This document shows positions 4,101 to 57,000 of a stretch of 64,000 nucleotides of DNA, piece by piece. The translations under genes and the position numbers were made by a program. Below the pieces are notes generated by a model, which worked only from the letters and a program-made list of their open reading frames with translations, made no database searches and was not told the DNA's origin. Each line of letters starts with the position of its first letter. The stretch's first letter is position 1. This DNA comes from Pelomyxa schiedti. Taxonomy: Eukaryota; Protista; Evosea. Where the stretch lies: positions 1 through 64,000 of the forward strand of contig JAHLWZ010000185.1 of assembly GCA_020536535.1 (NCBI GenBank), written 5' to 3'.

Positions 4101-5915
4101 GCTGCCTGTTTTGTAGAACACCACAAGCTCACCCATGGCTTCCACCAAAAGGCGAAGCACAAATGGGTTAGTAATAAGCTCACTCAAACTGGGTAATTCT
4201 TGAATGTATTGTTGGTATTGAGCCAATGTGAAAGGGCGAGGCTGAGTGCAGTATTTACTAAGATAGGCATCGATTTGTTGCGCGGTAAAAGGAGCTAAAC
4301 GTACAATTTGCAATGAAGTCGCATCCTGTGGTGTGAACCAACTTTCATACCCAGGTGTGCAATACGAGGTTCGGCAAGTGATGATAACTTTTAATTGCGG
4401 CCACGTATCAAGTTCATTTGCTCTGTAAATATTTTCTTGCACAGCATCACCTATTTCATCATATCCATCAAGAAGAAGAATGACCTGGTGCATTTTCAGC
4501 TGGGTAGGATCGATGAAGTATTTTTCTTGAAGTGTTAGAGCTACGCATTTACCAATGGTAGGTCTTGAAAAGCGTTTCAGAGGAATAAAGATAACCATTG
4601 GTAGATGTGGGTTACGTTGTTTCGCTGTCAAACGTTGTTGTTCTTCATATAGAAGAGAAATCGATTTCCCAGAACCGGCATCACCAGTAATCAGCAAAAC
4701 GCGATGAGGATCAACCGGGTTGAGAAAAGTGTTAACAATATCTGGCAGAGGTGTCACTGTACTTGTTGATACAGGTGGAATATAAAAAAACAATTGCTCT
4801 AGTTCAGCTGCAGCTTCTCTTTTCCGTGCAAGGATCATGCTATCCAATGGATTTGGCTTTGATGCCGACCACATTGACTGTAGGTCTTCTGCGTAAATAG
4901 TACGAAGTGAATCACGTCGTTCTATCAACATCGTTGTTAATTCATCCACAGTATGACCCCCATGAAGAATGAAATTGTGTCCTCCGCGGCGATTGAAAAA
5001 ACCACGAATGGTAGCCTCATTCGTGTCAACTATCTCCTGCAGAGTGAGTATGAATTCCTGCTGTGCACTAGGTGGCAGGTTGCTGAATTGTAAAAACCTT
5101 TCAGCGTATTCACCCCCAGTGGCTATTCTAACATGTTTATTTGCGGCCAGAAATCCCCGTGCTTGTTCTTCTGGAGTGGGATCGGCTAGTGATGAATCCG
5201 TAAAGGCCTCCCCAGGGTCTATTTTTATTGTCTGGGCGCACTTGTGACCCCCTGGTGGCTCATCAGTCAGTACTTGGAATCCAACGTTCCCACCGCTTCC
5301 ACCGATGACGTCAATGTCATTTATGAGTGCTGCAACTGCCAGAATTCGGCCCAGGCCCCGTTCTGGCAATTTCTGACCCCGGAATGTGATTGTACCGTCA
5401 GAGCAAATAGGCTTTGTTGGATTGAAGTCCTCAACTCTCGAGTACGGGGTGAATCCATCCACAATTTCACTCATGACGTGGACACCCTGGTAGTCTTCGG
5501 CAAGAGGAATCGGGCCATAGATCAAATTTGTGAGTCTCTGCATCGAGATCTGTATCCTGGCCACCGGTGCCCCATAGTACGCGTAAATGTCACTCGCGAT
5601 CTTTTCCCTGCAAGCCGCGGCCTCGGTCTTCTCCGCGTGGATTCCGCGAAAAACCAAGCGGCCATCGGGCGTCTCCTCTGGGCCCCAGTCCCGAACCGGG
5701 TCGCATTTTCCCAGCCAAAGCCTGCCGGTCTCAGTCTCCAGAAAAACCCCGCTGCTCAGTGTGCTGCCGCCCAGTCTTGGCCTCCCAGTGTTGGTGAATT
5801 CCTTGTCCTTGCGTATTATTTCGTCAATGACATCCGGGTGCACATTCATTGTGGGTTGGTTTTCTCCAAGCCCTTTCAACGAGCACTCGACCTCGTCGGT
5901 GCCCGTTGCGCACAT
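1125..5915 (-). CDS. Intronless STAND/NLR-like protein: LepB/PI-kinase-like domain + NACHT + pentapeptide repeats + WD40 repeats (1596 aa)
   Basis: Kinase-like motifs LWLGK, REKIASDIY, DIDVIGGSGGN and KIDPG. Walker A GDAGSGKS, Walker B ILLLDGYDE. Pentapeptide-like stretch (FTSADLSKI..LAEADFQQANMQGM). Many GH...LASG..D..V.LW WD40 repeats. Confidence 0.9.
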   Translation of the reverse strand: MCATGTDEVECSLKGLGENQPTMNVHPDVIDEIIRKDKEFTNTGRPRLGGSTLSSGVFLETETGRLWLGKCDPVRDWGPEETPDGRLVFRGIHAEKTEAAACREKIASDIYAYYGAPVARIQISMQRLTNLIYGPIPLAEDYQGVHVMSEIVDGFTPYSRVEDFNPTKPICSDGTITFRGQKLPERGLGRILAVAALINDIDVIGGSGGNVGFQVLTDEPPGGHKCAQTIKIDPGEAFTDSSLADPTPEEQARGFLAANKHVRIATGGEYAERFLQFSNLPPSAQQEFILTLQEIVDTNEATIRGFFNRRGGHNFILHGGHTVDELTTMLIERRDSLRTIYAEDLQSMWSASKPNPLDSMILARKREAAAELEQLFFYIPPVSTSTVTPLPDIVNTFLNPVDPHRVLLITGDAGSGKSISLLYEEQQRLTAKQRNPHLPMVIFIPLKRFSRPTIGKCVALTLQEKYFIDPTQLKMHQVILLLDGYDEIGDAVQENIYRANELDTWPQLKVIITCRTSYCTPGYESWFTPQDATSLQIVRLAPFTAQQIDAYLSKYCTQPRPFTLAQYQQYIQELPSLSELITNPFVLRLLVEAMGELVVFYKTGSSIDKTAIYDCFMRYWFAKQERRLLQGTTTPANWDPIAAFEDFSQRLAIFMHMSQCSEVDYTQQPDVAWVRYLSNDDLETLQARSGCPLQTIGVNRYSFLHKSFLEYFAARYMISILDNPTKLLAPILAPPKTELKPKHVISEPAIGKFLSEMFHKKPSCINRCFSLIKSSRKNPSEGPIAAYAITLLNSLGINLSGQDFTYTYLPKARLPHMIAHGTKFTSADLSKIHMPQSYLAEADFQQANMQGMRFGELSRLSFDDFEFKTVRCLCSNWDGTRLAVGCDTKIVVFNSLTRLRLAICEGHSNWISCLAYSPDGGLASGDQDGNVFLWDSSGTLLETLRHRHKGAVISLSYSAKGNLASGGKDKIDAGSFFPYCSDTSSIAFGPNEQLVTTNRFDRCVTLWRKTKNHAYHEYQSITPSESRTRTVAFSLDGRIASGSEDGVITLSTTEGHILQSLKRHTKAVTCLTFSHNGLLASGGDDDLVILWDSDGQILQVLSGHNKQIVGVAFLSHDRLASGSYNGSVILWNLSKDGTQENLSIVHDKKVQCVTFAPNGTLASGDKSGKIIFWEVSRGRSLSTLESLFQITCIAFSPDGRMAACCSGDDIMLWDSNGQPTQTIKGVEWGKKVVAFNKDGLLAAGKANDIVLRNINSEEVQILHGHDSRVVSVVFSVDGRLASSDYKGITILWDQHGNKVKTLVGESPTFCTNGHLATLKNDWVFLYDNKGKSILQIDTSEIRHARELSHETYYCCVKFGSVKCLAVVIGECIALYDPNNGKCRQVIQMENLVTCVTFNPTGEFLAAGSDSHEVKVFHLMDTSNGPQYLLYQVLPRRFPLTLRGARIDGARNLSLENKDLLVQCGAEGQPAKFSVPFDFHVSPLDPTVLEHLALVFKIRNEVYVDSIVIQTLADAAKVNINQVGAQLSTLPNGDTRVHLHLTSKEKQTFISVYEKFVGFIKHVGTSKGFVVFDLSTDILCNSVALHLATYRAHKTKL

Positions 5916-13437: not shown

Positions 13438-13915
13438 TATATAAAAAAATAAAAATGGTTTGTGCGCTGGGGAAAAACAAACAACCGGCCGGGGTAGAGC
13501 TGCAATAAACGTTCTGTAGCATCATCGTGATCACGAGACCACCTTTTCCTGGTCACAAGAAAGTACTTGCACACCTCCCTATCGTTCTCTTTCCCACAAG
13601 ACATGTTTATTTTCTCTAGTTTCTTTCCTTAGTTTTTTCTTATTTATGGGGCGCAGGGGAAATTTGTCACACGTAGACACCTTGTTTGTTTTGCCCAACG
13701 GTACCACATTAAGAAACCCATAATCACGGTAACAACCTACACCGCACGTGCAGCTTCAGGCAACAAAAAAAAACAGTAAGAGTTCGGTTAATAAACAACT
13801 TGGCGGAAAAACAACAGGTACCGGTGTTCCTACAATCATAATACCCGTCACCTGTTGTTAAGGCAAAGGGAAAAGTACCTTTCGAATTTGATTGGGCTGG
13901 GACTGCATGCACGAA

Positions 13916-14009
13916 ATTCCGCGGAGGAAATTCCGCGGAGGAAGTGCTGTGGCTATATCCTGATTCCACGGAGGAAATTCCGCGGAGGAAGTGCTGTGGC
14001 TATATCCTG
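13916..14009. repeat. Two tandem 47-bp units, each with two TCCGCGGA-type palindromic sub-repeats
   Basis: ATTCCGCGGAGGAAATTCCGCGGAGGAAGTGCTGTGGCTATATCCTG at 13916-13962 and 13963-14009, one mismatch. Confidence 0.95.
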
Positions 14010-14955
14010 GGGCTCTTTTTGCTGCGGTGGAGACCCAACCAAGGTGTGCACATCGGGCTGAAATGCCAACACTCACACTTGGGGTGGTTCCCCACAAGAA
14101 GCCAGTCAGAGAAGAAATACCGAGTGGATTTCATCATTGGGTGGAAATTCCAACTCTAAATGAAAACACTGGTTCACCCTGGAGCAACCACACAGCAAAT
14201 CTTTTGATACCGGTTATAATGTACTGTACACAGCACAGGGGAAAAAAATAAACAAATAAGAAATTAAAAAAAAAAATGCGACCTTGTTGCGTGGTGTCAA
14301 GATCTTGTGGAAAATAATGTTTAATATTAATTTTAGTTGTGTTTTTTTGGGCAAAACGAAAGTTGTCCCTGGGAAAAAAAGCGGGCTGAAATTTTTAGAG
14401 TACGTACAATGACGGCGAAGCGGGATTTGACGAAGACGGTGCTCTCGTATATCCTCGTTTGTTTGTTGTGGTGCTTTGGAATTGTGGACGCCCAACAACG
14501 ATGTGGTTGACGATGAAATGCACGGTGTCGTGATACGAATAACCCAGCCCAACAACACCAAGCCGTATTCCCTTAGCAGATCCATGGAACAAACGTCGAT
14601 GAGGTTCGCTTTCTCTGGGCTTGTCGCTTTGTGGCGGGTGTGACGCCACAGCAGGCAGCTCCCCGGTCATGTTTTTTATACAAAACAAAATTGAATACCG
14701 AAAGTAGGTTAAAAATGGTGTGTCGGGGGTGCCCATTATTATGGGATGCTCAAAGTAACTCGTGACATATTTTTACGGCATTTCAGTCCAAATTCCCAAC
14801 AAAATTCTGGACTTCTGCCCGTTCCTCTGAATTGGAAGCTACACTGCATTTTGGTTGAAATGGGGAAGTGAAAGGGGTGAAGAAAGTCATAGGAGATGGA
14901 GGCTTGTGGTAATTATGTAAAACTGAAACCGTTTTAAAACAGTGAAAGTACTTGG

Positions 14956-18821: not shown

Positions 18822-21138
18822 CTAGGAGCAGTGAAGTGTGAAAGAGGGTGTGTGAGTCTTGGGTGCTGTGAAGGGACTGGAGTGTCCAAAGGCTTTTCGG
18901 TGTGTTGGAGGTTTGGGCAATTTTTTCAGTTGTCCTGTAAGGGAAATGATGAGCTTCCAGTGTGTAATTTTATTTTGTGTTAAGTATGGTATTTTGGAGC
19001 AAGGAAGTACTTGATTGGCCAAGTTTTGCAACAAGGTGGTCTGGTATTAACCCTAATTCCACCATCTCGTCTTGTAAGGCACAGTAACCAAAGGAATACT
19101 GGTCCTATAGGTGGTGAGTATGTTCATGCTCTGCATTTATGTACATAGTATATTTGAGATAGCGCTTCTAGTAGTATTTCTATTTGAAGATAGGAAGTGT
19201 CTTGCCTGTTGCTGAACCATCCCTGGTCTTTGTTGTCTGAGACTTCTTACAGTATTACACATGTCCATGTTTCTAAGAACATTAATGGAGGTTTTCATCA
19301 AGTGAATGTCCCAATCCTCACCGCTCTCGCCGGTTGGTGGAAGCGGGGAGGGTGAATGGTTGATGAGTGATGTGCAATTTGATTCAATGTAGTGGTAAAG
19401 TTTTTCTATACTGATGTGAATGGCACAGAATGTTCCTGTGCGACCAACGCCAGCACTGTATGGGATTAAAGAAAAAAAAAGAATGGAATCATTGTACCTG
19501 CAATGTACTATTGTTGGTTTTGGTAGGGATGGAACTTGTGAAGAGCAAGAGGGTAACGAAGCTAATCGTACCCTCTTTGTTGGGTTTGAAGTGTCATCGG
19601 TGTGTTGACTGATATTTTGGATGAGTTTGCGAATATGTCGTGTTGTGCTGGGGACACTGTGGTCCGGCCATCCACTATACTGATAGTGCTCAATAGTCCG
19701 AATTTCACCTGGATGCTAACCCAGGTTAGTCGAGAGTCTATCAGACAACACACACACTTGGGAATTTGTGATCTGGAAAGTTCTATGGATAACAGAATTC
19801 TTGGAGAACATTTCTTCTCCAATCAAAGTAACAGTCATGAAGCCATACTCGTGGGATTTTTCTTGTGGAGTTGGCCAATATCTGTCAACCTTAACCTAGT
19901 GGGGCTTAAGAGTTGGCAAGTTGGGTGAAATCCTTACTGTTGCGTGTTCAAACTCTTTTGTCAGCATAATGATAAGAAAACTGGCGGTTTCCCATGTCAT
20001 TCGCCAGAAATCAGGGAATGTGCATGGAAGAGGGCCTTGAGTAGCAATGTACGCCTTGTTTCCTGACATATCCTTTGAAGGTGTTACATTGTGGTTGTGG
20101 GCAGGGGATGTACTTTGATATAACTTGCGTTGATATAATCAGACCCAATGGCGTCATAAGCGTGTAGTTTCACTCTGGTTTGTTCATCTTTTGCGTGTTA
20201 GAATCTCTTAAAAGAAAAAAGAACATACAAGGTATAACATTTGGGTATCTATTTTTGGCTCTATTATACACCTGTAGCCCTGTTGCTCCATGCTCCACAG
20301 TTAATGGTTCTCCCAGAAACTTTTTGTTTAATTGTGTCAGGTACAAAGCAAATCTAAAAAAAAGGAAAAAAAAAGAAGAAATACACACTGCAAATTCTGT
20401 ATATGGCTTAACAGGATCAAGAAGTGAAATGAGTATCTCCTGTAAAGCTTCTTTCTCTGTGCTTGATGGGGTCATGAAATCCAAGCCGTTATTCCACATT
20501 GTACAAAAGGGTCTCCTCTCCAATGCAGCGTCGAGGCCACTCCCATAAGTTTCAACAGTCGGCGCGCATGTGGAGGTAGGTGGACTCGCCATCAATGTCG
20601 AGAAGGGCACAATTGAAGAGCCGTCGTCAGCCTCGGAGCGGAGAGGTGAAACTGCTTTTCGCGGAAACGCGGGTGCCGATTCGGAATCTGGGGACATTGA
20701 CCGCACCGAGTTAGAGGAGATGGATCTAGTAGGCCCTCTGCATTGAGAGACTAGTGAGAGGGAATGCGACCGCTTCAGAGGCATTAATACCTCCTGAGTG
20801 TCGTCACATTCATCGCTGTTGTCATTATGGGTTGAATCATTGTCATTGTCATTGTCATTGCCATTTCGGGCACTGCCGAGGACTGACCTCGTCGAGGCGG
20901 TCTGGGTCTCGTCGTGGTCGTCGAGAATCGGCGACCCGTGGCCGTCTGAATCCCGAGCATTTGTGGCAGACGCAGCCGAAGAAGAAGACGGAATTGTGGG
21001 AGACAACGGAGAGCGGGTCGGGCTCGTCGACGCCGGGGACAAAGAAAATTCGTCGGGAGGAGGCCTGAGATGGCCCAGTTGGCGTTGGTCGTCGTCGTCA
21101 AAATTGGTGGTGTTGGTGTCGTGGCCGCGGGGCTGCAT
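18822..21138 (-). CDS. Classical protein tyrosine phosphatase with low-complexity N-terminus
   Basis: KNRYPNV, DYINAS, YIATQGP, YWP, WPDH, HCSAGVGRTG and MVQQQ|DQY. The 3' end is either 18970 or 18822, depending on a last intron. Confidence 0.92.
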
Positions 21139-21388
21139 CGTGTACTCCGTTGTTGTTTTTCCCTTGGGTATTTCCTTTTTCCTTTGTGTGCACAAAGCCG
21201 AAGAACAGTAACTAACAACCAAAGTGACTACTTAGTTGAATTGTGTTCATCCCCCTTACGACAAAGTGCTGATTCCAGTTTAGGGCCCCGTGATCGGTCT
21301 CCTATTTTGCCGATGAAAAACTGGTGTTCGGTGATTTTGCCCCGAACGGTTTTATTTTTCCATTTTTCAAGCTTTTTCAAACAAACAA

Positions 21389-21730
21389 GAAGGACCCTTC
21401 TGGTTAATACTCACTACCTTGATCAACAAAGTGGATCATGTAACCTTGCCTACCAAACCAGAAGGGGGTTTGATTTGGACGGATCCACGACTCCCTCCGC
21501 CGTTTTGCCAGATGCCCTTTCTTGTTGTCCAGAAAAGACCTTGTGGAATCGATTCCTAGAGTTTTCTCTTTTTCCGAATCTGAATAAAACAGCGGCACTG
21601 GATCCCATTATCAACCAACCATGCGAACAATACTCCCTCAAGGGTACTGGGACACCTGAGGGGCAGTAAGAGTCCGACTAAAAATACCGGCCTCCTTGGA
21701 TTCAAGGAATCCGGGGATTCACGAACCCTC
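21389..21730 (-). ncRNA. Candidate ~340-nt structured RNA, family unassigned
   Basis: About 12 nested or adjacent helices found by eye, including paired 5' and 3' ends. Eight positions are G-U on the minus strand but A-C on the plus strand. Lies in an unusually large intergenic gap. Confidence 0.65.
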
Positions 21731-21791
21731 AAAAAAAAATGGACCGAGAAAAAGAACAAAAAAAAAAAGCACAACCAAAACAATCCGGCAA

Positions 21792-22829
21792 ATGAATTGC
21801 AAATGTGTGGTGGTACGACACATGCCCCGCTGTTACTTATTGTTTATTATTCCCCGTGGATCTAACGTTTGTTGTGTAGGTGGGAGATGGAGCCGTTGGT
21901 ATTTTTCCTTCCTCTTTTTTTCCCCTCCCGAAAGATCTTTTTTTTGCGACGACCAACGAACATTCAAAAAGGCAAGACGTGCTTGCTCATTAGTTGGAGC
22001 AGTGGAGCTTTTCCGCCGTATGTCCCTTTTATCATCTTGAAAAATAGGAAGAAAAATTATTGTCTAACACAGTTAAAAAGGGAAGACTACATTCCCACAG
22101 TTTTTGTGTGTATCCATCCCCCAGAAATTTCGACCATCTACACCAGTTTCCCTCTTACCACCTGAAAAGAACAATTCTACCAAAGCAGCTACACTTGAGG
22201 GAAAACCTGTAAACGTAACTCTTTGGGATACCGCCGGCCAAGAAGATGTAAGCAATTGCATCTCCAATCAATAGGTCCTAACTGTAGTAGTATGACCGCA
22301 TCCGCCCATGCTCATATATCGGCGCAGATGTATTTCTTGTTTGTTTTTCTGTTGTAAACCCAAGCACTTTTTCGAACGTTAAAGGGAAATGGTATGGCTC
22401 TTCATCTCCTGATTGGTTTTTATGGTTAATTTCCAGGGTTCCGGAGATATCTCACCATTGCCCAAACATTCCATTCCTGTTGGTTGGAACTAAAATCGAT
22501 CTACGGAATGATCCCGGCATTGTTAAAAAGCTGCAACAGAAAAGCCGAAGGGGTCCAATAACAGCGGAGGAAGGTGAAGCCGAAGCAGCAGCAATCGGAG
22601 CTGTTAAGGTACCTTCTTTGTTTGTAAGTGCAATACTTACCAACCCATCTTTTTTTAGTACATGGAATGCTCGGCACTCACCTTGGAGGTTAGTTCTTGT
22701 TTCAAGTTTGTGACCCGTTCTCATTAATTACAGAATGTGAATACTGTGTTTGAAGAAGGCATGAGGGCGACATTCAAGCACCTAAAGAAGAAGGGAAAGA
22801 AGGGAGGAAAGGAATGCATGGTCATGTAA
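21792..22829 (+). CDS. Rho-family (Rac-like) small GTPase, multi-exon
   Basis: [46 protein letters not shown] and ECSALT; polybasic tail and CAAX CMVM. Confidence 0.93.
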
Positions 22830-23043
22830 GATGACCATTTCGGTATTGTCAACTATACGAGTTGCAAAAAAACTCTCAACAAGAGATTTTTTGTGCCATA
22901 TCTCTTCAGAAATAGAATAGAAGCCCATTTCGATGGCTACCACCATGGACCAGTAATCACATTTTGGCACTAATGCCCTGCGAAAAAACAAACGCCAACA
23001 TAAGATCTTCATTTTCTTTTTTTTTTAATTTAATCAAAAAAGG

Positions 23044-23946
23044 ATGGCGGCCAGTGGTGCGTTGAGTGCAACAAGGGCACGTAGTGCTGCGGTACTGCGT
23101 CTGGCGTCGGATTATGCTAGCATTCTGAGGGAACCTCCTGATGTAATTATTGTTGTCGGACTGCGGGCCGCAAGTTAATGAGGAAAAAAAAGGGTGCATC
23201 GGCGAAGCCTCTTTCTGATGACAACATGTTCAATTGGAATGCCACAATATTTGGACCCCCAGACTCTGTGTGGGAAGGCAACGCCCTTTTATTGTGGGCA
23301 CATCTTAATGACTCCTTGTGCACTGCACACCACTTACCGCGGGAGCTTATGTTTTTATAAATGTCGAGGAGCCTGTTCCTAACGCTGGTATAAGGTGGAA
23401 TATTTCAGTTACGAATGGCATTCCCAGAGCAGTATGTTCACCTCATACTGATCAAGTTACTTACAGCAAAAGATACCCAGAAAGACCACCAAAGATCCGA
23501 TTTACGTCAGAAATGTTTCACCCAAATGGTATTGTTCTCTTGAATGCCTTGTAGAATTAAGTCTGTATAGTTTTTCCTGATGGAACTCTATGTCTTGATA
23601 TAATACAGGGTATCCTGGAAATCTTCGTTTGCCGATCCCTAAATCTTTGTTAATTGTTCCCCAGATAAGTGGTCACCTATCTATAGTGTCTCTACTATTT
23701 TAACTTCCATTCAAGTATGTCAGACATCACGTTCTTCTTTGCACTAAACTTCGACCATCTCTTTTGATAGTCTCTTCTGACTGACCCAAACCCCAACTCA
23801 CCAGGTTTGTACCTCAATTTCTTAAACACCCACTTACAATCTTGGCAGCCAACCCTGAAGCAGCACAGCTATTGAACCACGACAAAAAAGCCTACAACAG
23901 AAAAGTCCGCAAATGCGTAGAGAAGTCCACCGAGACTGATTCCTAG
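23044..23946 (+). CDS. Ubiquitin-conjugating enzyme E2, Rad6/UBE2A-like
   Basis: WNATIFGPPDSVWEGGIF, YPERPP, MFHPNVFPDGTLCLDI, WSPIY and DPNPNSPANPEAA; one GC-AG intron. Confidence 0.92.
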
Positions 23947-31315: not shown

Positions 31316-31488
31316 TTGTGCTTTGGTTTTTTTTTTTTTATTTGTTTGTTGCGCTACTGGGTCGGTGTCGCTGTCTAGATCGTTGACTTTTTGTGTTTTG
31401 TTATGTGGAGATTGTGCAATTTCTCAAGTGTACGTTTTGTGATATGAGCACCAACTTAGCAGGCGAATTTTGACAGATTGCGGGGGTG

Positions 31489-31527
31489 AAGTTGCCGGGC
31501 AGGTGCCGGGCAACTGCCCGGCAACTT
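31489..31527. repeat. Perfect 14-bp inverted repeat with 11-nt spacer
   Basis: AAGTTGCCGGGCAG (31489-31502) and CTGCCCGGCAACTT (31514-31527); the spacer holds another TGCCGGGCA copy. Confidence 0.9.
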
Positions 31528-33194
31528 GCCGGAAGTTTTCTCTGACATCTCCACGAAAAAGTGACCCGATATGGACCCTGGGAGCCTGAGATTCATCTCT
31601 TCCGGTGCTGAATTTCCTTCCAAGAACCCTCATATGGTTGAATAAAATAATCAACAGGATCCCTGGGTTGGGTGGTGCTTTTCTCTACTAGGCTTCCCTT
31701 GTTTCAGGGAAACAAACATGTTTCCAGAAGAAGCTGGTGTATGACAGCCAACACAACCCTACACATCACCCCTGTTTTTTGAAGTGAGTAACCAGGACTG
31801 AATGGTTTTTCATTTTGACAGTACAAACTGTGCCAACAATATTGGCCTGACGATTCAAGTTCAGCAGAGCGTGTTGGGTTTGAAAGCCAGTTTCTCTGAA
31901 ATCTGTCCGTTTTTGGTTGTTGGAACCTTTTTGGGGTTCTCTCTTAGAAAAGAACAGAAGAAAATAAATAGAACTTGATCTATTACTGTAACCACGGACC
32001 CCAGGGTGCCATGCACCTCGCAGCTTCACGCACTCCCTGTGGGTTGACAACTGTGCCCCAGGCGTGCAGCGGGTTCTGTGGCAGTGTGGATGTGAGGTGA
32101 AAAGTCCGCCACCTAAAAAAATTGTATGTGAGACGCGGAAAAAGAGAAAAGAGGCCATCCTACCAGTATCACAAGGTGCCAGAAATACAGAAATGCGCGG
32201 TGGTGTGCAATGCTGGGAGCCTTGGGTACCAACGCAACCTATCATGGTTGAGTGGGGTTATGATACAAAGGAAGGGGGATTTACCTTGGTGACCGGCTGT
32301 CATCTCATCAGTGGCAGGCTCTCCATACTTGCCACCTCATCCACTGGAGGTGATCTAATGGTAGATGAGATGAAAGGAGAACCGTGGGTTAAAGGACAAC
32401 TTGCCTATATCAGAGTGGGCAACAGCCGACTACAATGGGTAACATCTATTGGCTTCATCGCTGTTCCAAGCTTGGTCATTCCAGGTGCCTGCCAGCATGT
32501 TAGTGGGACCAGGGAAGGCTACGGTGGGTACAAACTGAATTCCAAGTCAGTGAGGAACAGTTTCCAAAGGTGTCCGCTTTAGTCTGTGGAAAACGTGAGA
32601 GGGAGAAAGAGGAAAGACAAGGGTACCTACCCAACTTCCCAGGCACCAGCTGGGTGGAGTGAGTGTAAGTTGGGAACACGGCAGAGTGGAGTGTAGGAGC
32701 CCAGTGAGCGGGAGTGTTGGTGTGCAAGAGCAAGGGGTGTTAGTGCCGAGGTGCAACAGGTAAAGGCGGGTACAGCCTGGCATGCACTATGTTTGTCAGT
32801 GGCGTCCATTGTCCTGTTGTTGTTGAGTGGTGATAAGATAAGGGAGAGGGAATGCACCTTGGTGATAGATTGTTGGCAGGTCCGCCACCTGAATAATATG
32901 TGGGCTGCCTGGGAAAGAAAAAAAAGAAGCCACCTACCAGCATCACTGTTCAATGTGTCGGGATAATACAAAGGGAGGGGGGGAGGTGGATTTACCGTGG
33001 CGATGACAAGTTGCAACTCGACCTGGTTATAAAGTGTGAGAACTCGAAAAAGAAAAACAGAGAAGATACCTGCAGCTCTGGCTTGGTTCGGAAGACTGAC
33101 TGAGTGCCGCAGGGAATCAGCCCTATGTTGCTGTGAGGAAATGGAACACAACAGTAAGTTTAACACAAGACTAAGGAAGAACGAGACAAGGCAA

Positions 33195-39424: not shown

Positions 39425-40405
39425 ATGATGCGTGGGGTGTTGTGCCTGTGCGTCGTTGTTGTTGTTTGGTGGGCGTTTGTTGTGCGCGGCCATCAAGGCA
39501 TGGACGTGTCGTCGTTGATAACGGCGGACGACTTCTCGTGCGGGCTGGCGGACGGCTACGACACGGTCGTCGTCCGCGCGTACCACTCTTACGGCGGCGT
39601 GGACACCAACGCACCCCCGACCCTGGAGAACGCGCAGCAGGCTGGGCTGCTCGTGACTGACGTGTACCACTTCCCTTGTTACGGAAAGGGTCTGTTGTTG
39701 TTGTTGCTGTTGTGTTGTGTTGTGTATTGTATGTGTATATTATACATCCACGTCCGTTCAGTTCGGTCGTTTTTTTCCTTGACACATGTTGAGGGGAAGC
39801 TTCTGGTTGTTTTTGTTTTTATTGTGTTTTTCAATTAACTGACTTACGACGCTCTGGATGATGATGGCACTGGCACTTTGATGTGTGCATATTGTCTGCT
39901 CTACTTGCGTTGGTTATGTGATAGATAAAACTGGGGAGCTTCCGGCTGTGCAACAAGTGTCTGATATGGTGGAATACCTGGCCTCGACTAATAGCACATA
40001 TGGAAGATTGTGGTTTGATGTGGAGACCAACCCAAGTGACGGGTGCGGATGGGAAACAAGCTCAGCAAACTTCCCACTCAATTGCCAGTTTTTGGGTGAC
40101 CTTATAACTGCCGCCCGCGACCTCAATCAGACCGTTGGAGTGTATGTGAGCTCGTACGAATGGAGCATTATAATGGGAAGTGCCTGCACCATTGCCTCTG
40201 ACACCCTTTTGTGGTTTGTTTCCCTAGTTCATTCTAATTTGTTATTAACATGTGTCCAAAAAACCCCAGGTACCCACATTGGGACGACAATCTTTCCTTC
40301 AGTGATTTTGTACCCTTTGGTGGTTGGACTGAACCAACAATGAAACAATACTCAGACAAAGAGCACATTTGCTCTCTTAACGAGGATGCAGACTGGTGGC
40401 CTTAA
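39425..40405 (+). CDS. Secreted GH25 lysozyme (amoeba/nematode Lys-type)
   Basis: Signal peptide, GMDVS, VVRAYHSYGGVD, DVYHFPC, LWFDVE, LWYPHWD..FVPFGGW..MKQY; 2 introns. Confidence 0.9.
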
Positions 40406-40487
40406 AAGGGGGCCCAAGACATGTATTAACATTAAAAAAAACCTCTTGCGGTTTTTTTCGTTGTCCTCTTTTCTGTATCTGCATCCT

Positions 40488-43400
40488 CTAGTTGTTTTGA
40501 AGTGACTCTAGAACCTCACTTATCTCTTTGAAGTCTGATACCAAATTATTACAAGTTGTAAAGAAAGGGGAATTTTACCTGGCCTGGCATCAGCTTCAGC
40601 AGCCCAACAGGAAGCAATGAGTGTTCTCAGTCTTGGGTCCCATTCTTCAGGAATGGGTAATCTTTTTCCCGCAATCACGAATTCAGTTATTCCTGGTATT
40701 TGAGATGTATTTAGTTGTTATTGGGGTGGTGGAACAGGACACACTCCAGGTGCTAGAAAACTCGGTGGCATTGTAGGGCTCGGTGTTCTTAAGTATTTGG
40801 TACATGACAATGGCGAAACTGGGAGAGGAAAAAAGTTTTAAAAGGGGCTAATTTGTTGTGTTTGAACTTGCCTGTACACATCAGCACTCGAAGTATAAGC
40901 TCGGTTGTCAAGGAGTTCAGGGGACATGTATGCTGGGGTTCCAATCTGTGGTAGGGGAATTGAACTGCAGGTTCCAGGGAATAGACTTCCTTACCCCGGT
41001 TGTCATTAGCTTTGAAGAATTGCTGTGTACATCCCGGCAAGTCCCTTTTAGATGGTAGCACTAGAGAATGGAAAAAGGAGTAATACCAAAGTCGGTTAGT
41101 TTGCAGTTTACTGGGGCGTCAATTTGGAGAGAAGCCATCAGAAAGTTATCAGGTTTCAAGTCCCTGTGTAAAATCGAAGATGTATGGAGAAAGAGTATCC
41201 CTTCGGGCTCATATTCAGACAACTTTTTGCAAGAAATGGAAAAACGGCACCTTTGGCTGCATCAAGCAAGCATTTCAACTTGAGAGCTTGAGAAAATGTG
41301 TGTTTCTGGGAATTTTATTTATTTAGTAGAGTCGAAAGTGAAAGTTATGCACGCACTTGCATGCAGGACCATAAGTTTCCAAGTGGCATGTATTCCTTTG
41401 AAATTTTTACTATGTTGAAGAGAGTTTCATTCGCATACGGTTACAATTGCCAAAGCACCTGATAAGTGAACGGCCCCTACGAAATTAACAATCTGGAGAG
41501 CATAAATTTAGAGCGACGGTTCCGGTTCACGAACACACATACGTAAATGTTTCTCAAGGATTCCAGCATCTCAACTTCCCGTTGGAAATCTTCATATACT
41601 CCAGTGCCTGACTGAATTTTGAGAACTTTAACTGCCACTTCGCCATTCCTCCAAGATCCTGCAACTGTAAGAGCTAAAAAGTTCCACAAAAGGAAACCTT
41701 GGAACACAGAACCATAGGAACCTTCACCAATCGGAGGCTGTCAATACCGAGACAGATGAGGTTAGTACCCCGATTAAATGACTAAACGAAACCTACCCGT
41801 TGGAGAATAAGTTCTTCAGGGTCAAGTTTTGTGCTCACTCGTGACTCTACAGAGATTGGGATAATACAAAAGCAAGATTCCTCTTGCCTAAAGGTATTCC
41901 CTACCGTTTGATCAGTTATTTTGCTTTGAGGTTGTCAGAGGAACCAACCTCGGGTTACTGCAAGGTAAACAGGAGACGAGATTTTTGTGGTGCAATGGCA
42001 CCTCAAAATTGCAGTGAACTCAGCATTTTTCCCCTTGTTCGAAAGTAAGTAACCTGTTCACATAGGGTGTAATGAATACCGCTGAAAGGGTTGTCACTAT
42101 GGGTGACATGGAAACTGAGAACTTTGGTGTGTGCGGGAGGAAGAATTTCAATGCCAATTTGTTGTGAGAAGAATTGGAAATTGTAAAGTGCTCCACATTA
42201 TCGGAACCCACACTTGCTTGGTGTGATTCTAATGACAAGCACCGTTACGAACACAAGGAATGAGGAAAAAAGTACCTAGTCCGAAAGTGAAGGTTTCTAC
42301 ACTAAGAGTGAGCCCCAAATCTGCTAGGGAAACTTCCTTGCTCAGAGATGTATCAAGAATTTCACTGGGGTCCACTGGTTGGGAGAAAAACTGCAGCTTA
42401 TCCACTGCACTCAGCTCAACGCCACCTTCATTTTTTCTTCGAGGGTGTAAAAGTAACATCAAAAAATAAGAAGACGCAACTTGGAGTGGATTTTTCTCCA
42501 GAAAATAACAGTTGCTACAGCAGACACGGCGGCAAATAAAGCACTCCCAACTGCAATTACGATGTAACTCCAAAGAGGTAAACTCGCTTGGTGACAGAAG
42601 ACTGAGAAGTAACCATGAAAATTAAACTGGTTTGGTTTTTTTTTTGGCTGGAGAATACCATCTGTGGATGCAGCTGAAATTCTATCCACATCAATGGAAT
42701 AGGCCCCAAAATGTGAAAAGGAAAAAGACACTTGAATCTTTTGTATTGATGATTTATCAATGGATGAATCATCAGTATTGATGCAGATACTACGCCTAGA
42801 CAAAATGAGAAATACCAATAGGAGATTTGGCACTTTACCATTGAGAATGTAAAGACTCGTCCAGAGAAACCGTAAATGCGAGGCCGAAGGCATCAATGAG
42901 TGAAATGTCAATTGCGACTTCAAATATTTCTTCGGTTAGAAGATGAATGCCAGTAATTGACATACCACTTTCGGAGCTGTTAGTTCTTACAACTAATGTA
43001 ATCCTGAATAAGAATTTGATCAGTAAAGGGGCAACCGAGAAAGATTTATCACCATGACAGAGATGCCTGCAGAACAAACAAATCTGGTTGAATATCTAGA
43101 GTGCAAGAGCTCCAACATTGAAGTCTCCAGAACCCAGTCCCTGAAAAAGGGTCCTCTCGGGTGAATTCACCATTGGACAGGAGTTCCAGTCCAGCACCAA
43201 GTTCAGGTTCACACAAGTCCATTGATTCGTCCCACAAAACAGGGTCTGAGCCGTGGGTGAATTTCAAATGCGTGTGCGTAAGAGCAAGGTGCATACCAAT
43301 GGTGCCATTGATAGAAAGGACGCCAGTTTCCACACATTTCTTCATATTGCAGGCCCTAATGTAGTACAAAACTGAAATATGGTACTCGAAAGCGAAAACT

Positions 43401-53828: not shown

Positions 53829-54016
53829 GAACCGTTATTTTTCAACAAAATACAAAAGTCTAGGAAGGAGAAATGCACGGACTTTTCATCCCCCAAAAGG
53901 AACGTCTGACCGAAGGTTTTTGTTTGTGCAGTCTCTAGCTGAGAAAAGATCCGGGTGGCTTTGCTGAATCTCTTGCCGAGTCCTCGCTACCGAGAACACA
54001 CGACCAAATAGATCTA

Positions 54017-57000
54017 ATGTCTGCGACGGTGCCGCACAAGCGGCACCCCTCGCAAGCCATACAGCGCAACACAAAACTAGGTAGTGCGGCTCTGCCCATA
54101 GTCCCCACCGACGTACCAAAAAGGCGCAGGACCGCCGCCCAGCCACCCCCAAAGCCATCGACGCCCACGAGTGCTGCTGCTGCTACTACTACTAGTAGCA
54201 TATCGACAGTACACCGCGGGGTAGCAACCGCAACCAACAACACGATAAAAAACCCGAAGACCCCCCCGGCGAGGAAAAACCCTGTGCCGACAATTCGCCC
54301 GACAGCAGTGCACGACAACATGGCGGCCAACAACACCACCATGAAAAACACGACGACCCCGTCGACACCCGCGGCGAGGAAAAACCCTGTGACAACTCGC
54401 CCGGGGCCAGAATCAGCAACGCGTGCCACCGTTACATCTACTGCCCGCGAAGACGACGAGGACGAGGATGAGGGCGAGGAAGCGGGGCTGCCGGCCCCTA
54501 CCAAGACGGCGAAAACAGCCACTTCCCATAATACCCCCTACAGCAGCAGCGGCCACAAGCCGATGGGCACCAAGAACGTGGACCATAATCAAACTGGTCA
54601 CCACAAGGGTGCCATTCCCAAATCGTGTTCGTCAGGGAGCTCAGAACCCCTAAGTGCGCATGTAAATAAAGGCACTGAGACTGTCACAGAACCTGCACTG
54701 CAACAAACACCTCCCATTGTCCCAAATCCCACCCCCAAACAAAAAAGTGATACCTCCAAGGTTCCAACATGCCAGAAAAAATCGCCTGTGGCTCCGCTAT
54801 CCACGAAAAAGAAAAAACCAAAACCAACAACAACCCAGAATCATGGAAACACCGCACTTAACACTGGAAGGGCAATGGGAATATCGGACAAGTTCTCCCA
54901 ACAATCAATAACCACTTCTGTGTCACAACCAACAAAGTGCCCTTTCCAAGTGGGGGTTAAACCTAAAACACCTGAACCTTCAAGCCGGCAGATAAGTGCG
55001 AATGCAAGAGAAGCCAAAGCCAAAAGAACAAAAAAATCTGAACAAGGAGCAGAACTAAAAACTGCCAATCAAAGCCAGCCAATCCAAAGCTGTGGAAGTA
55101 GCTGCACAACACAAAATACTTCACGAAGTGTTCAATCAATAAGCTTTGTGGAAAATGGGAGAGGCACCCCACCATTGGAGGGAATGACAGAGGAAATGGT
55201 GCTGAGGTGCGTGGACGGGAATTTTCCTGTTCCACCTGACGCGACCGTCTTGGTTCCTCCTTATGCAACCAGTGTGGACCTCTCCACTTTTGAATGCAGG
55301 CAGGTTTTTAAGTGGTACTTGATGGCAATGAAGGTGACATTTCTGATGAACTCTACAATAAGGTACCTCCGCCCTTCACAGTCTCGATATTGACACCATT
55401 TAGGCCTGTACATGTTTGGTAAAACCGGCCTTAAACACATGTAAAAGATGGAGATCAAAAGCAGCAGCTGATGCGGCCAGGGCAGTTGCTGAAGCAAAGG
55501 CTAAAGCCATGGTTGCTGAAGCAAAGGCTAAAAAAGCCATGGAGGTTGCTGAAGCAAAGGCTAAAAGAGCCATGGAGGTTGCTGAAGCAAAGGCTAAAAG
55601 AGCCATGGAGGTTGCTGAAGCAAAGACTAAAGAAGCCACGGAGGCAAAGGCTAAAGCAGATGAGGCCAGGGCAGTTGCCGAAGCAAAGGCTAAAGCAGTT
55701 GCCGAAGCACAGGCTAAAGCAGCCATGGAGGCAAAGGCTCACACAAATATTGTTGTAAAACGTATGTTTTCATGAAGTTGAGAGTAGCAAATTTGATCAT
55801 CCTTTTTTTGCAGATAATCTTGATACCGTCAGCAAGGAGGCTATGAATGAACTTAGGCACTATTACATGACTGGGACAGGGATGGTTGGCTCCTGCAAAA
55901 TTCTGGTTGAGTTAGAAAAGACAATCAACTCTGTTCAAAAAGCCCCGTTTGGCCAAGGCATTGACAAACCCTTTATTATTCTGGATGGGTCATCTGGAAT
56001 GGGCAAGACGCAGCTGGCCTTCTCGTTGAAAGAAGATGTCATGTTTGTTTTTTACCCTCTCTTCTCTCATTTTCCTGGTGCTGGAGGCCTTCTTGCTTGC
56101 TGACTCTGAGTAGATACCTTGTTTATAGTGGTGAGAACCAGGATATATACAAGTGCTTTTCACATTTATCAAGTGCATTCAGGCAGTCCGTTCTCAGAGA
56201 CTCTGGGCATCTTAAGCAGATCGATATGTTACCATATTGCCATTTCTTGTTTTCTGAACAGGAATTGTTGTGGACCACAGCTTTCTTTGATTGGTGCTTT
56301 GGAGAACAGTGGGACCCAAGTACCAAGAAATGCAGGATGAAAAATACCCCACATTTCAATTCATCAGACCCAGACAGCAGCAACACAGAGGAGCAATACC
56401 CACGGAGACTCCCATATAGCCTTTTGGGAAGGATTAACCACCAAATCACAGGTCCAATGACCAATAGTCACTTTTTGGAAAAGTGGTCGTGGTTACCAAG
56501 AAAGCCTGTTATTTTTATAGACGAGATGCCAGGACAAAATAAGAAGGAAGAACTTGAGTTTATGAGAAATCTGTGCCGAGCTTTGGGCCTCGCTGTTATT
56601 TTGTCTGGCACAAACTCCAGAGCGGTAAATATGCTCAATACTGACTCGTCACGAATTGAGTCTACCCCTTATCTGTGGTGCCATTTGTTCCCAAGGCCTT
56701 CACCTCCGACAGTGACGTCATTGAAAGCATCAAGGGTGCCAAAATATGATCAAATTCTGGCCAAGTGCAACGAAATTGACCCAAGACTTGCCGATTTCGT
56801 CAGGAAGTGCTGCGTCACCTGCAGAGGGTTATTTGTCCTTGCCATGTTGCGTCATTTGGAAGTGACACTTCTGGCTGCACACCCTCAAGGCATATTATCG
56901 CCACTGGAGGTACTGGATGACCTCATGGCAGCGATGCAAGGCACAGTGCTGCAGAAGAAGAACTCCATTTACACAACCCAAGTTGGTCGTTCTGGACAGG

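What the first reader, a model, noticed from the sequence alone, without database searches (positions are those of the whole stretch)
21389..21730. Unassigned ~340-nt, strand-specific structured RNA between the PTP and Rac genes
Seen in sequence (plus-strand coordinates): terminal helix 21389-96/21723-30; 21401-09/21609-17 (9 bp); nested 21481-87/21599-605 (7 bp), 21497-506/21586-95 (10 bp) and 21508-13/21578-83 (6 bp), which close a junction with hairpins 21514-22/21531-39 (9 bp), 21545-56 and 21558-69; further hairpins at 21420-38, 21453-73, 21631-68 and 21687-714. Eight imperfect pairs are A-C on plus but G-U on minus, the pattern expected from selection on an RNA transcribed from the minus strand. 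The minus strand also has an Sm-like UAUUUUUAG and a possible pseudoknot (GACUCUU/GGGAGUC). It fills a ~650-nt gap where two other divergent pairs have only 72-82 nt. I could not find the diagnostic motifs of RNase P/MRP, SRP, U3, snRNAs, tmRNA or common riboswitches. Inference: either a very divergent housekeeping RNA (RNase P/MRP, telomerase, 7SK-like) or a new RNA class; it could also be a structured PTP 5' leader.
Basis: partly seen in the sequence, partly recalled or inferred. Interest (0 to 1): 0.85.

Follow-up and report, generated by a model that had tools for sequence, protein, structure and literature searches.

The report
Folded spacer between two amoeba genes
A 340-base stretch between two back-to-back genes of the amoeba Pelomyxa schiedti can fold neatly on one strand, but it matches no known RNA, lacks the promoter that every RNA gene checked in this genome has, and was not seen as a transcript, so it is about as likely to be ordinary promoter DNA as a real RNA.

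Summary
The genome is Pelomyxa schiedti. The local hairpins are real and the minus strand folds better (z about -3, plus about -0.7) into four side-by-side domains. The G-U asymmetry is not significant once composition is controlled (P 0.13-0.17). About 4% of arbitrary tiles, and 5 of 17 comparable gaps, fold as well. RNase P, MRP, SRP, U1, U2, U3, U6 and U11 all exist elsewhere. All 30 of their genes checked for it (U11 not checked) carry a DUSE-like CCCAYAA box; this element has none and no Pol III terminator. It is single-copy, with no Rfam hit and no homologue, so covariation could not be tested. Poly(A)-tailed single-cell RNA contigs do not show it (two runs absent, one ambiguous). Best reading: upstream DNA of the divergent PTP1/Rac pair with an incidental fold (0.45). 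Rivals: structured PTP1 leader (0.2), DUSE-less orphan RNA (0.2), telomerase RNA (0.04). Earlier scan notes report other orphan RNAs in this genome, mostly promoter-driven; none is shown to be related.

The parts
21389..21731 (-). Foldable segment: four adjacent domains on the minus strand, ends not paired to each other
21667..21731 (-). Domain 1: long interrupted hairpin (10 + 4 + 4 + 7 bp); z -3.1
21631..21668 (-). Domain 2: hairpin with 8-bp core; z -2.1
21467..21620 (-). Domain 3: nested 7, 10 and 6 bp stems closing a four-way junction with three hairpins; z -3.1 (core -3.4)
21395..21466 (-).
21678..21686 (-). Sm-like nonamer; partly paired inside domain 1 (P 0.6); its U5 run could also stop Pol III
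   Evidence: sequence
21604..21610 (+). Best DUSE-like site nearby (CCCATTA, one mismatch; score 7.0 against a minimum of 10.7 in real genes), inside the element and on the other strand
21450..21608 (-). 52-codon upstream ORF; one of five AUGs between the element's 5' end and the PTP start; no homologue
21347..21380 (-). A-rich flank on the minus strand with AAUAAA at 21356-21351: either a 3' end signal or the start of the PTP 5' UTR
21731..21791 (+). A-rich 61-nt stretch before the Rac ATG, like the 5' UTRs of two Rac paralogues; holds an 18-codon uORF (ATG 21739) whose stop overlaps the Rac ATG
21136..21138 (-). Start codon of protein-tyrosine phosphatase 1 (KAH3765857.1, 620 aa); spliced gene runs leftwards
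21792..21794 (+). Start codon of the Rac-family GTPase gene (spliced; RNA contigs cover 22110-22956)

Best explanation
The segment is the shared upstream region of the divergent PTP1 and Rac genes, lying between the two A-rich 5' UTR blocks. It works as promoter or spacer DNA, and its tidy minus-strand fold is a by-product: a 47% GC stretch with several repeated palindromic words (GGATCC twice, CCGG twice, GATC four times), each of which can pair with its own second copy. It is not a stand-alone RNA gene. Shown: position, single copy, no DUSE, no terminator, fold strength within the range of other gaps. Inferred: that transcription starts at the two edges and the segment itself is not a stable RNA.
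For: No DUSE-like box on either strand where 30 of 30 Pol II and Pol III RNA genes have one. No T-run after the minus-strand 3' end and internal T5 runs on both strands, whereas P, MRP, SRP and U6 end in runs of 7 or more T. z of this size occurs in about 4% of tiles and 5 of 17 similar gaps and falls to -1.5 if 9 nt are trimmed. G-U asymmetry not significant. GGAT/ATCC words enriched: 8 against a mean of 2.3. Absent from two RNA runs that assembled both neighbours at depth 3-8; the 2023 libraries of this organism were poly(A)-tailed in vitro (PMC10579272; that these runs are those libraries is inferred). No paralogue by BLAST or three covariance models.
Against: The fold is unusually well defined (rank 3 of 372 tiles; first of 36 gap windows). 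z holds when 3- and 4-letter words are preserved, so word bias alone does not explain it. The sense/antisense pattern resembles that of real MRP (-2.75/+0.85) and RNase P (-1.95/-0.53). The fold fills the whole space between the homopolymer flanks. Run X3 holds unexplained words equal to about one element length.
Confidence: 0.45

Rival explanations
1. Structured 5' leader of PTP1 mRNA. Pol II starts in the 61-nt gap next to Rac and makes a leader of about 590 nt whose four domains and five upstream AUGs throttle scanning, so that phosphatase output is controlled at translation (release by unwinding, shunting or internal entry).
For: The better-folding strand is the PTP sense strand. A leader needs no DUSE or terminator. 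RNA contigs of PTP stop 255 nt short of its ATG, so they cannot show a leader. Possible GT-AG introns of typical size lie at 21414-21371 and 21259-21212 (inference).
Against: PTP already has an A-rich stretch before its ATG and 250 nt of unstructured upstream DNA (z +1.0). The closest paralogue (58% identical) has no such fold upstream. The candidate introns lack a well-placed branch site, and GTRAGTA is not enriched in this window.
Confidence: 0.2
2. Independent, low-abundance Pol II RNA made divergently from the Rac promoter, about 340-390 nt, ending near the AAUAAA at 21356; a protein-binding scaffold of an undescribed class, perhaps with Sm proteins.
For: Well-defined four-domain fold with sharp edges; A-rich 3' flank like those of U1 and U2; Sm-like nonamer; unexplained word share in run X3; earlier unchecked notes describe several orphan RNAs in this genome.
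Against: No DUSE; not in runs X1 and X2; Sm-like site is partly paired and near the 5' end; AAUAAA is common (75 in the window); no homologue anywhere searched.
Confidence: 0.2
3. RNA hosted in an unannotated 5' UTR intron of PTP (minus) or Rac (plus), or a plus-strand structured Rac leader.
For: T-rich start and A-rich AG end on both strands resemble local introns; intronic RNAs need no promoter of their own.
Against: Donor candidates are poor; no C/D or H/ACA box pairs in the right geometry; plus strand folds no better than shuffles.
Confidence: 0.07
4. Telomerase RNA of Pelomyxa.
For: Single copy, right size, low abundance expected, possible pseudoknot, Sm-like site as in yeasts (own knowledge); I found no paper naming an amoebozoan telomerase RNA.
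Against: No 7-nt permutation of the TTAGGG template on either strand. The minus-strand template-like repeats for (TACTGGG)n and (TTTGA)n, and for (TTTAG)n 105 nt downstream, have no terminal arrays in the assembly. The P6.1-like 4-bp stem has an A4 loop. No DUSE.
Confidence: 0.04
5. Retroposed or mobile relic (A9 tail on the plus strand, 5-bp GGACC on both sides).
For: A9 at 21731-39; GGACC at 21392 and 21741.
Against: Single copy; no source RNA found; no terminal inverted repeat; fold favours the other strand; a 5-bp match is expected by chance.
Confidence: 0.03

Closest known systems
DUSE-driven small RNA genes of Amoebozoa (snRNAs, SRP, P, MRP; dictyostelid Class I RNAs, PMC7919456)
   Same: Intergenic, single-locus, folded, similar z pattern to P and MRP.
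   Different: No DUSE about 60 nt upstream, which that paper finds before all expressed Class I genes and which I find before 30 of 30 Pelomyxa RNA genes; no Pol III terminator; no Rfam match.
Structured eukaryotic 5' leaders with uORFs; HCV-type IRES as a shape analogue (own knowledge)
   Same: About 340 nt, long stem ending in a multi-hairpin junction, possible pseudoknot, on the sense strand of a downstream gene.
   Different: No IRES family hit in Rfam; the start codon lies 250 nt beyond the fold; transcription of the leader not shown.
snR30/U17 H/ACA RNA (PMC7601244)
   Same: Plus strand has m1-like AUUCCUA (21552-58), m2-like CAACCAU (21616-22) and an ACA shortly after.
   Different: No stem beneath m1/m2, 4 nt between m2 and ACA (7 in the human and yeast RNAs, own knowledge), motifs do not pair cleanly with this species' 18S ES6, wrong strand for the fold, no RF00045 hit.
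Telomerase RNA (PMC12133305)
   Same: Single copy, size, possible pseudoknot.
   Different: No template for a known or assembly-supported telomere repeat; no USE/DUSE; no CR4/5-type P6.1 loop.

Membership tests
Nuclear RNase P RNA (RF00009) | CR-I to CR-V and P4 pseudoknot; match to the family model | tested here: not met
   No hit on the element at E up to 10; canonical gene at C676, 91 bits
RNase MRP RNA (RF00030) | CR-I/CR-V P4 helix; match to the family model | tested here: not met
   Canonical gene at C811, 81 bits; element not among the hits
SRP RNA, U1, U2, U3, U6, U11 | Match to the family model | tested here: not met
   6, 25, 34, 8, 21 and 1 matches elsewhere; none at the element
U4, U5, U12, U4atac, riboswitches, tmRNA, tRNA, other Rfam families | Match to a family model | tested here: not met
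   cmscan of the element against 4227 families gave only chance hits; ARAGORN none. Their true genes were not searched genome-wide
Stand-alone snRNA-type gene of Amoebozoa | DUSE-like CCCAYAA about 55-70 nt upstream | tested here: not met
   30 of 30 reference loci score 10.7-16.9; best site in 21101-21900 scores 7.0, best on the minus strand 4.4
Pol III transcript | T-run terminator at the 3' end, none inside; upstream or internal promoter | tested here: not met
   No T4 after 21389 on the minus strand; internal T5 on both strands; B-box-like word at the 5' end carries a 2-nt insertion
snR30/U17 | [quoted passage not shown] | tested here: not met
Box C/D or H/ACA guide RNA | Box pairs in the right geometry and an antisense element to rRNA or snRNA | tested here: not met
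   No C box; no CUGA on the minus strand; longest match to the rDNA contig 12-13 nt, as in shuffles
Telomerase RNA | Template of at least one telomere repeat plus alignment bases | tested here: inconclusive
   Telomere repeat unknown; TTAGGG and GGGATT arrays are internal; three candidate units rejected; plus-strand (TTGG)n and (TTTGG)n candidates not tested
Telomerase RNA | Template-adjacent pseudoknot and CR4/5 or equivalent | tested here: inconclusive
   Proposed pseudoknot competes with a P 0.82 helix; P6.1-like stem lacks the U/G loop (own knowledge of the consensus)
Telomerase RNA | Association with TERT | not testable with these tools
   needs pull-down
MITE/SINE | Many dispersed copies, terminal inverted repeats or target-site duplications | tested here: not met
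   Single copy; no terminal inverted repeat
Structured RNA under selection (any class) | Covariation among homologues | not testable with these tools
   No homologue found
Structured 5' leader | Transcription start upstream of the fold and continuity with the PTP reading frame | tested here: inconclusive
   RNA contigs reach neither gene's 5' end

The most novel reading that the evidence does not exclude
A discrete, low-abundance Pol II RNA of an undescribed class, made from the back of the Rac promoter without the DUSE box that other Pelomyxa RNA genes use, with a four-way-junction domain and an Sm site (a small part of this probability is that it is the first amoebozoan telomerase RNA).
Probability: 0.2. 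Interest if true: 0.72.

Novelty: not a real feature. Interest (0 to 1): 0.3.

Why it matters
If it is only promoter DNA, it is a caution: in this genome a z of about -3 with strand asymmetry is common enough in intergenic gaps that it does not identify an RNA gene, while the DUSE box is a clean test (30 of 30). If it is transcribed, it would be either a rare long structured leader in a compact protist genome, controlling a signalling phosphatase, or a DUSE-independent orphan RNA. If it were the telomerase RNA it would fill a gap, since I found none described for Amoebozoa.

Tried and rejected
Rfam scans at gathering and relaxed thresholds: only chance hits. Divergent P, MRP, SRP, U1, U2, U3, U6, U11: true genes found elsewhere. 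A 10-nt match to the U1 stem-loop I loop (plus 21420-29) and a 9-nt complement of U6 (minus 21633-25): within chance for these lengths. rRNA mimic or guide: no match beyond shuffles. snR30/U17: geometry and ES6 pairing fail. Cobalamin-riboswitch-like words, a tRNA T-arm-like word at the 5' end and a cloverleaf-like junction: resemblance only, no model hit. Small protein gene: the 52-codon ORF has no homologue, and by hand no GT-AG path that I tried joins it to PTP. Homologue hunts: own genome by BLAST and three single-sequence covariance models, self only; two exact-pattern scans of metagenomes, none; phages, none; ten viral pattern hits, none scored by the model; upstream of PTP and Rac paralogues and of a related metatranscriptome PTP, nothing. 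The look-up of encoding contigs gave no other assembly of this locus. A CGGCAA promoter motif was not clearly enriched. My first z background used 10-12 shuffles and overstated the tails; the re-run values replace it. The 18S family search failed twice, so the rDNA was found by pattern; LSU landmarks were not recognised in the fetched stretch, so the rRNA test is firm for 18S only.

Full report
Setting. The assembly has 52,367,397 bases in 5337 contigs, identical to the published Pelomyxa schiedti genome (PMC8887013), and the left neighbour is NCBI's protein-tyrosine phosphatase 1 of that species. PTP starts at 21138 on the minus strand and a Rac-family GTPase at 21792 on the plus strand; RNA contigs confirm introns in both. 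The element fills the space between a T-rich block (21347-21380) and an A-rich block (21731-21791).

The fold. The minus strand folds at -119.3 kcal/mol (z -2.66) and the plus strand at -95.3 (z -0.63). Repeats gave -2.8 to -3.6, also with shuffles that keep 3- and 4-letter words. The domains score z -3.1, -2.1, -3.1 and -3.2 with boundaries chosen from the fold.

How unusual. Seven other loci among about 183 arbitrary 342-nt tiles of the window reach z -2.7 or lower on re-testing. Among 17 other gaps defined the same way by composition and given the same freedom, five reach -2.4 or lower, two of them below -4.5 (20 shuffles, so about 0.5 of noise). With purely compositional edges the element scores -1.5. 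The G-U argument is weak because the plus strand is C-rich: P 0.13-0.17 for helices of 8-9 bp or more, 0.86 for 7 bp. The one outstanding measure is how well defined the fold is, 47% of bases in pairs above P 0.8, rank 3 of 372, similar to MRP (46%), although 4-6% of 2- and 3-letter shuffles also reach it. Several helices are two copies of one palindromic word, and GGAT/ATCC is enriched.

Known families. Rfam gives nothing. RNase P, MRP, SRP, U1, U2, U3, U6 and U11 have normal genes elsewhere. U17 was not found in the genome by its vertebrate model; the plus strand has m1- and m2-like words, but the geometry described in PMC7601244 is not met and they do not pair cleanly with this species' ES6. 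There is no antisense match to the rDNA contig beyond chance. For telomerase RNA the repeat is unknown: TTAGGG and GGGATT arrays are internal, no TTAGGG template is present, and three candidate units have no terminal arrays.

Promoter and terminator. All 30 P, MRP, SRP, U1, U2, U3 and U6 loci carry a CCCAYAA-type box, at -53 to -68 where the model covers the 5' end. This is the DUSE of dictyostelids, reported before all expressed Class I genes (PMC7919456). The best site within 21101-21900 scores 7.0 against a minimum of 10.7, lies inside the element and on the plus strand. Pol III genes here end in long T-runs; the element has none at its minus-strand end and has internal T5 runs on both strands. 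An AAUAAA lies 33-38 nt beyond the 3' end, but the word is common.

Expression. Three single-cell RNA runs of one sample and one DNA run hold the stretch, as contigs only. None of the laid contigs covers 20884-22109, which includes both true 5' ends, so a leader cannot be judged. The 2023 study tailed its RNA with poly(A) polymerase (PMC10579272), so a non-polyadenylated RNA could appear, if these are those libraries. My arithmetic on the word shares shows X1 and X2 fully explained by their laid contigs (0.37 against 0.34; 0.28 against 0.26), so the element is not assembled there. X3 has 0.18 against 0.10; the excess of 0.076 fits the element (0.079) but equally a PTP exon 1 piece. An abundant RNA is therefore unlikely; a rare one is not excluded.

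Homologues. Single copy by BLAST and by covariance models of three parts. Nothing in metagenomes, phages or viral contigs, nor upstream of the closest PTP and Rac paralogues. Single-sequence models see only fairly close copies, and no related genome is available, so covariation is untested.

Verdict. The hairpins are real but the evidence does not establish an RNA. Most likely single reading: promoter or spacer DNA of the divergent pair with an incidental fold (0.45). The RNA readings together are about as likely: PTP1 leader 0.2, DUSE-less independent RNA 0.2, intron-hosted or Rac leader 0.07, telomerase RNA 0.04. These odds are my judgement. The novelty label follows the best reading and would change to a new kind or a new member of a known kind if a transcript is shown. 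Earlier notes of this scan describe other orphan RNAs here, mostly promoter-driven and some abundant; I did not check them, and my models found no link to any other locus.

Noticed in passing
L017-L022 (U1 loci): U1 copies differ at the 5' end (AUACUUACCUG, AUACAUACCUG, AUACGUACCUG), which would read GUAAGU, GUAUGU and GUACGU donors; local introns do start with such varied donors. Several copies sit as back-to-back pairs about 130-150 nt apart.
   Followed up: no
window 13717-14230: A good DUSE-like box (CCCATAA) in an intergenic gap, followed by a repeat-containing stretch that folds at z -3 to -3.8 on both strands; possible unannotated small RNA gene.
   Followed up: no
window 31418-31938: Gap upstream of a DnaJ-like gene with repeated CCGGCAA/TTGCCGG words; folds at z -3.7 and -3.1.
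   Followed up: partly
L078 432-864 and L075 2254-2470: Two gaps without a DUSE that fold much more strongly on one strand (z -5.3 and -4.7, 20 shuffles) than the element studied.
   Followed up: no
window 23279-23395: The 117-nt joint in the ubiquitin-conjugating enzyme-like gene, listed with odd ends, reads as a GC-AG intron when shifted by the four ambiguous letters; one run holds it unspliced.
   Followed up: partly
window 20320-20388: PTP intron of 69 nt is in frame and free of stops, so retention would add 23 residues just before the catalytic domain.
   Followed up: no
L002 (G000:C811:110023-110515): RNase MRP RNA is 493 nt, long for the family (model 266).
   Followed up: no
G000:C386:144461-144569: Weak U6-family match (33.6 bits), possibly U6atac; U11 is at C820, so a minor spliceosome seems present.
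   Followed up: no
window 19337-19678, 40199-40540, 53879-54562, 4289-4630: Tiles that fold at z -3 to -4.2 on one strand; the first lies within the PTP gene.
   Followed up: no
window 21739-21795: 18-codon upstream ORF whose stop codon overlaps the Rac start codon.
   Followed up: no
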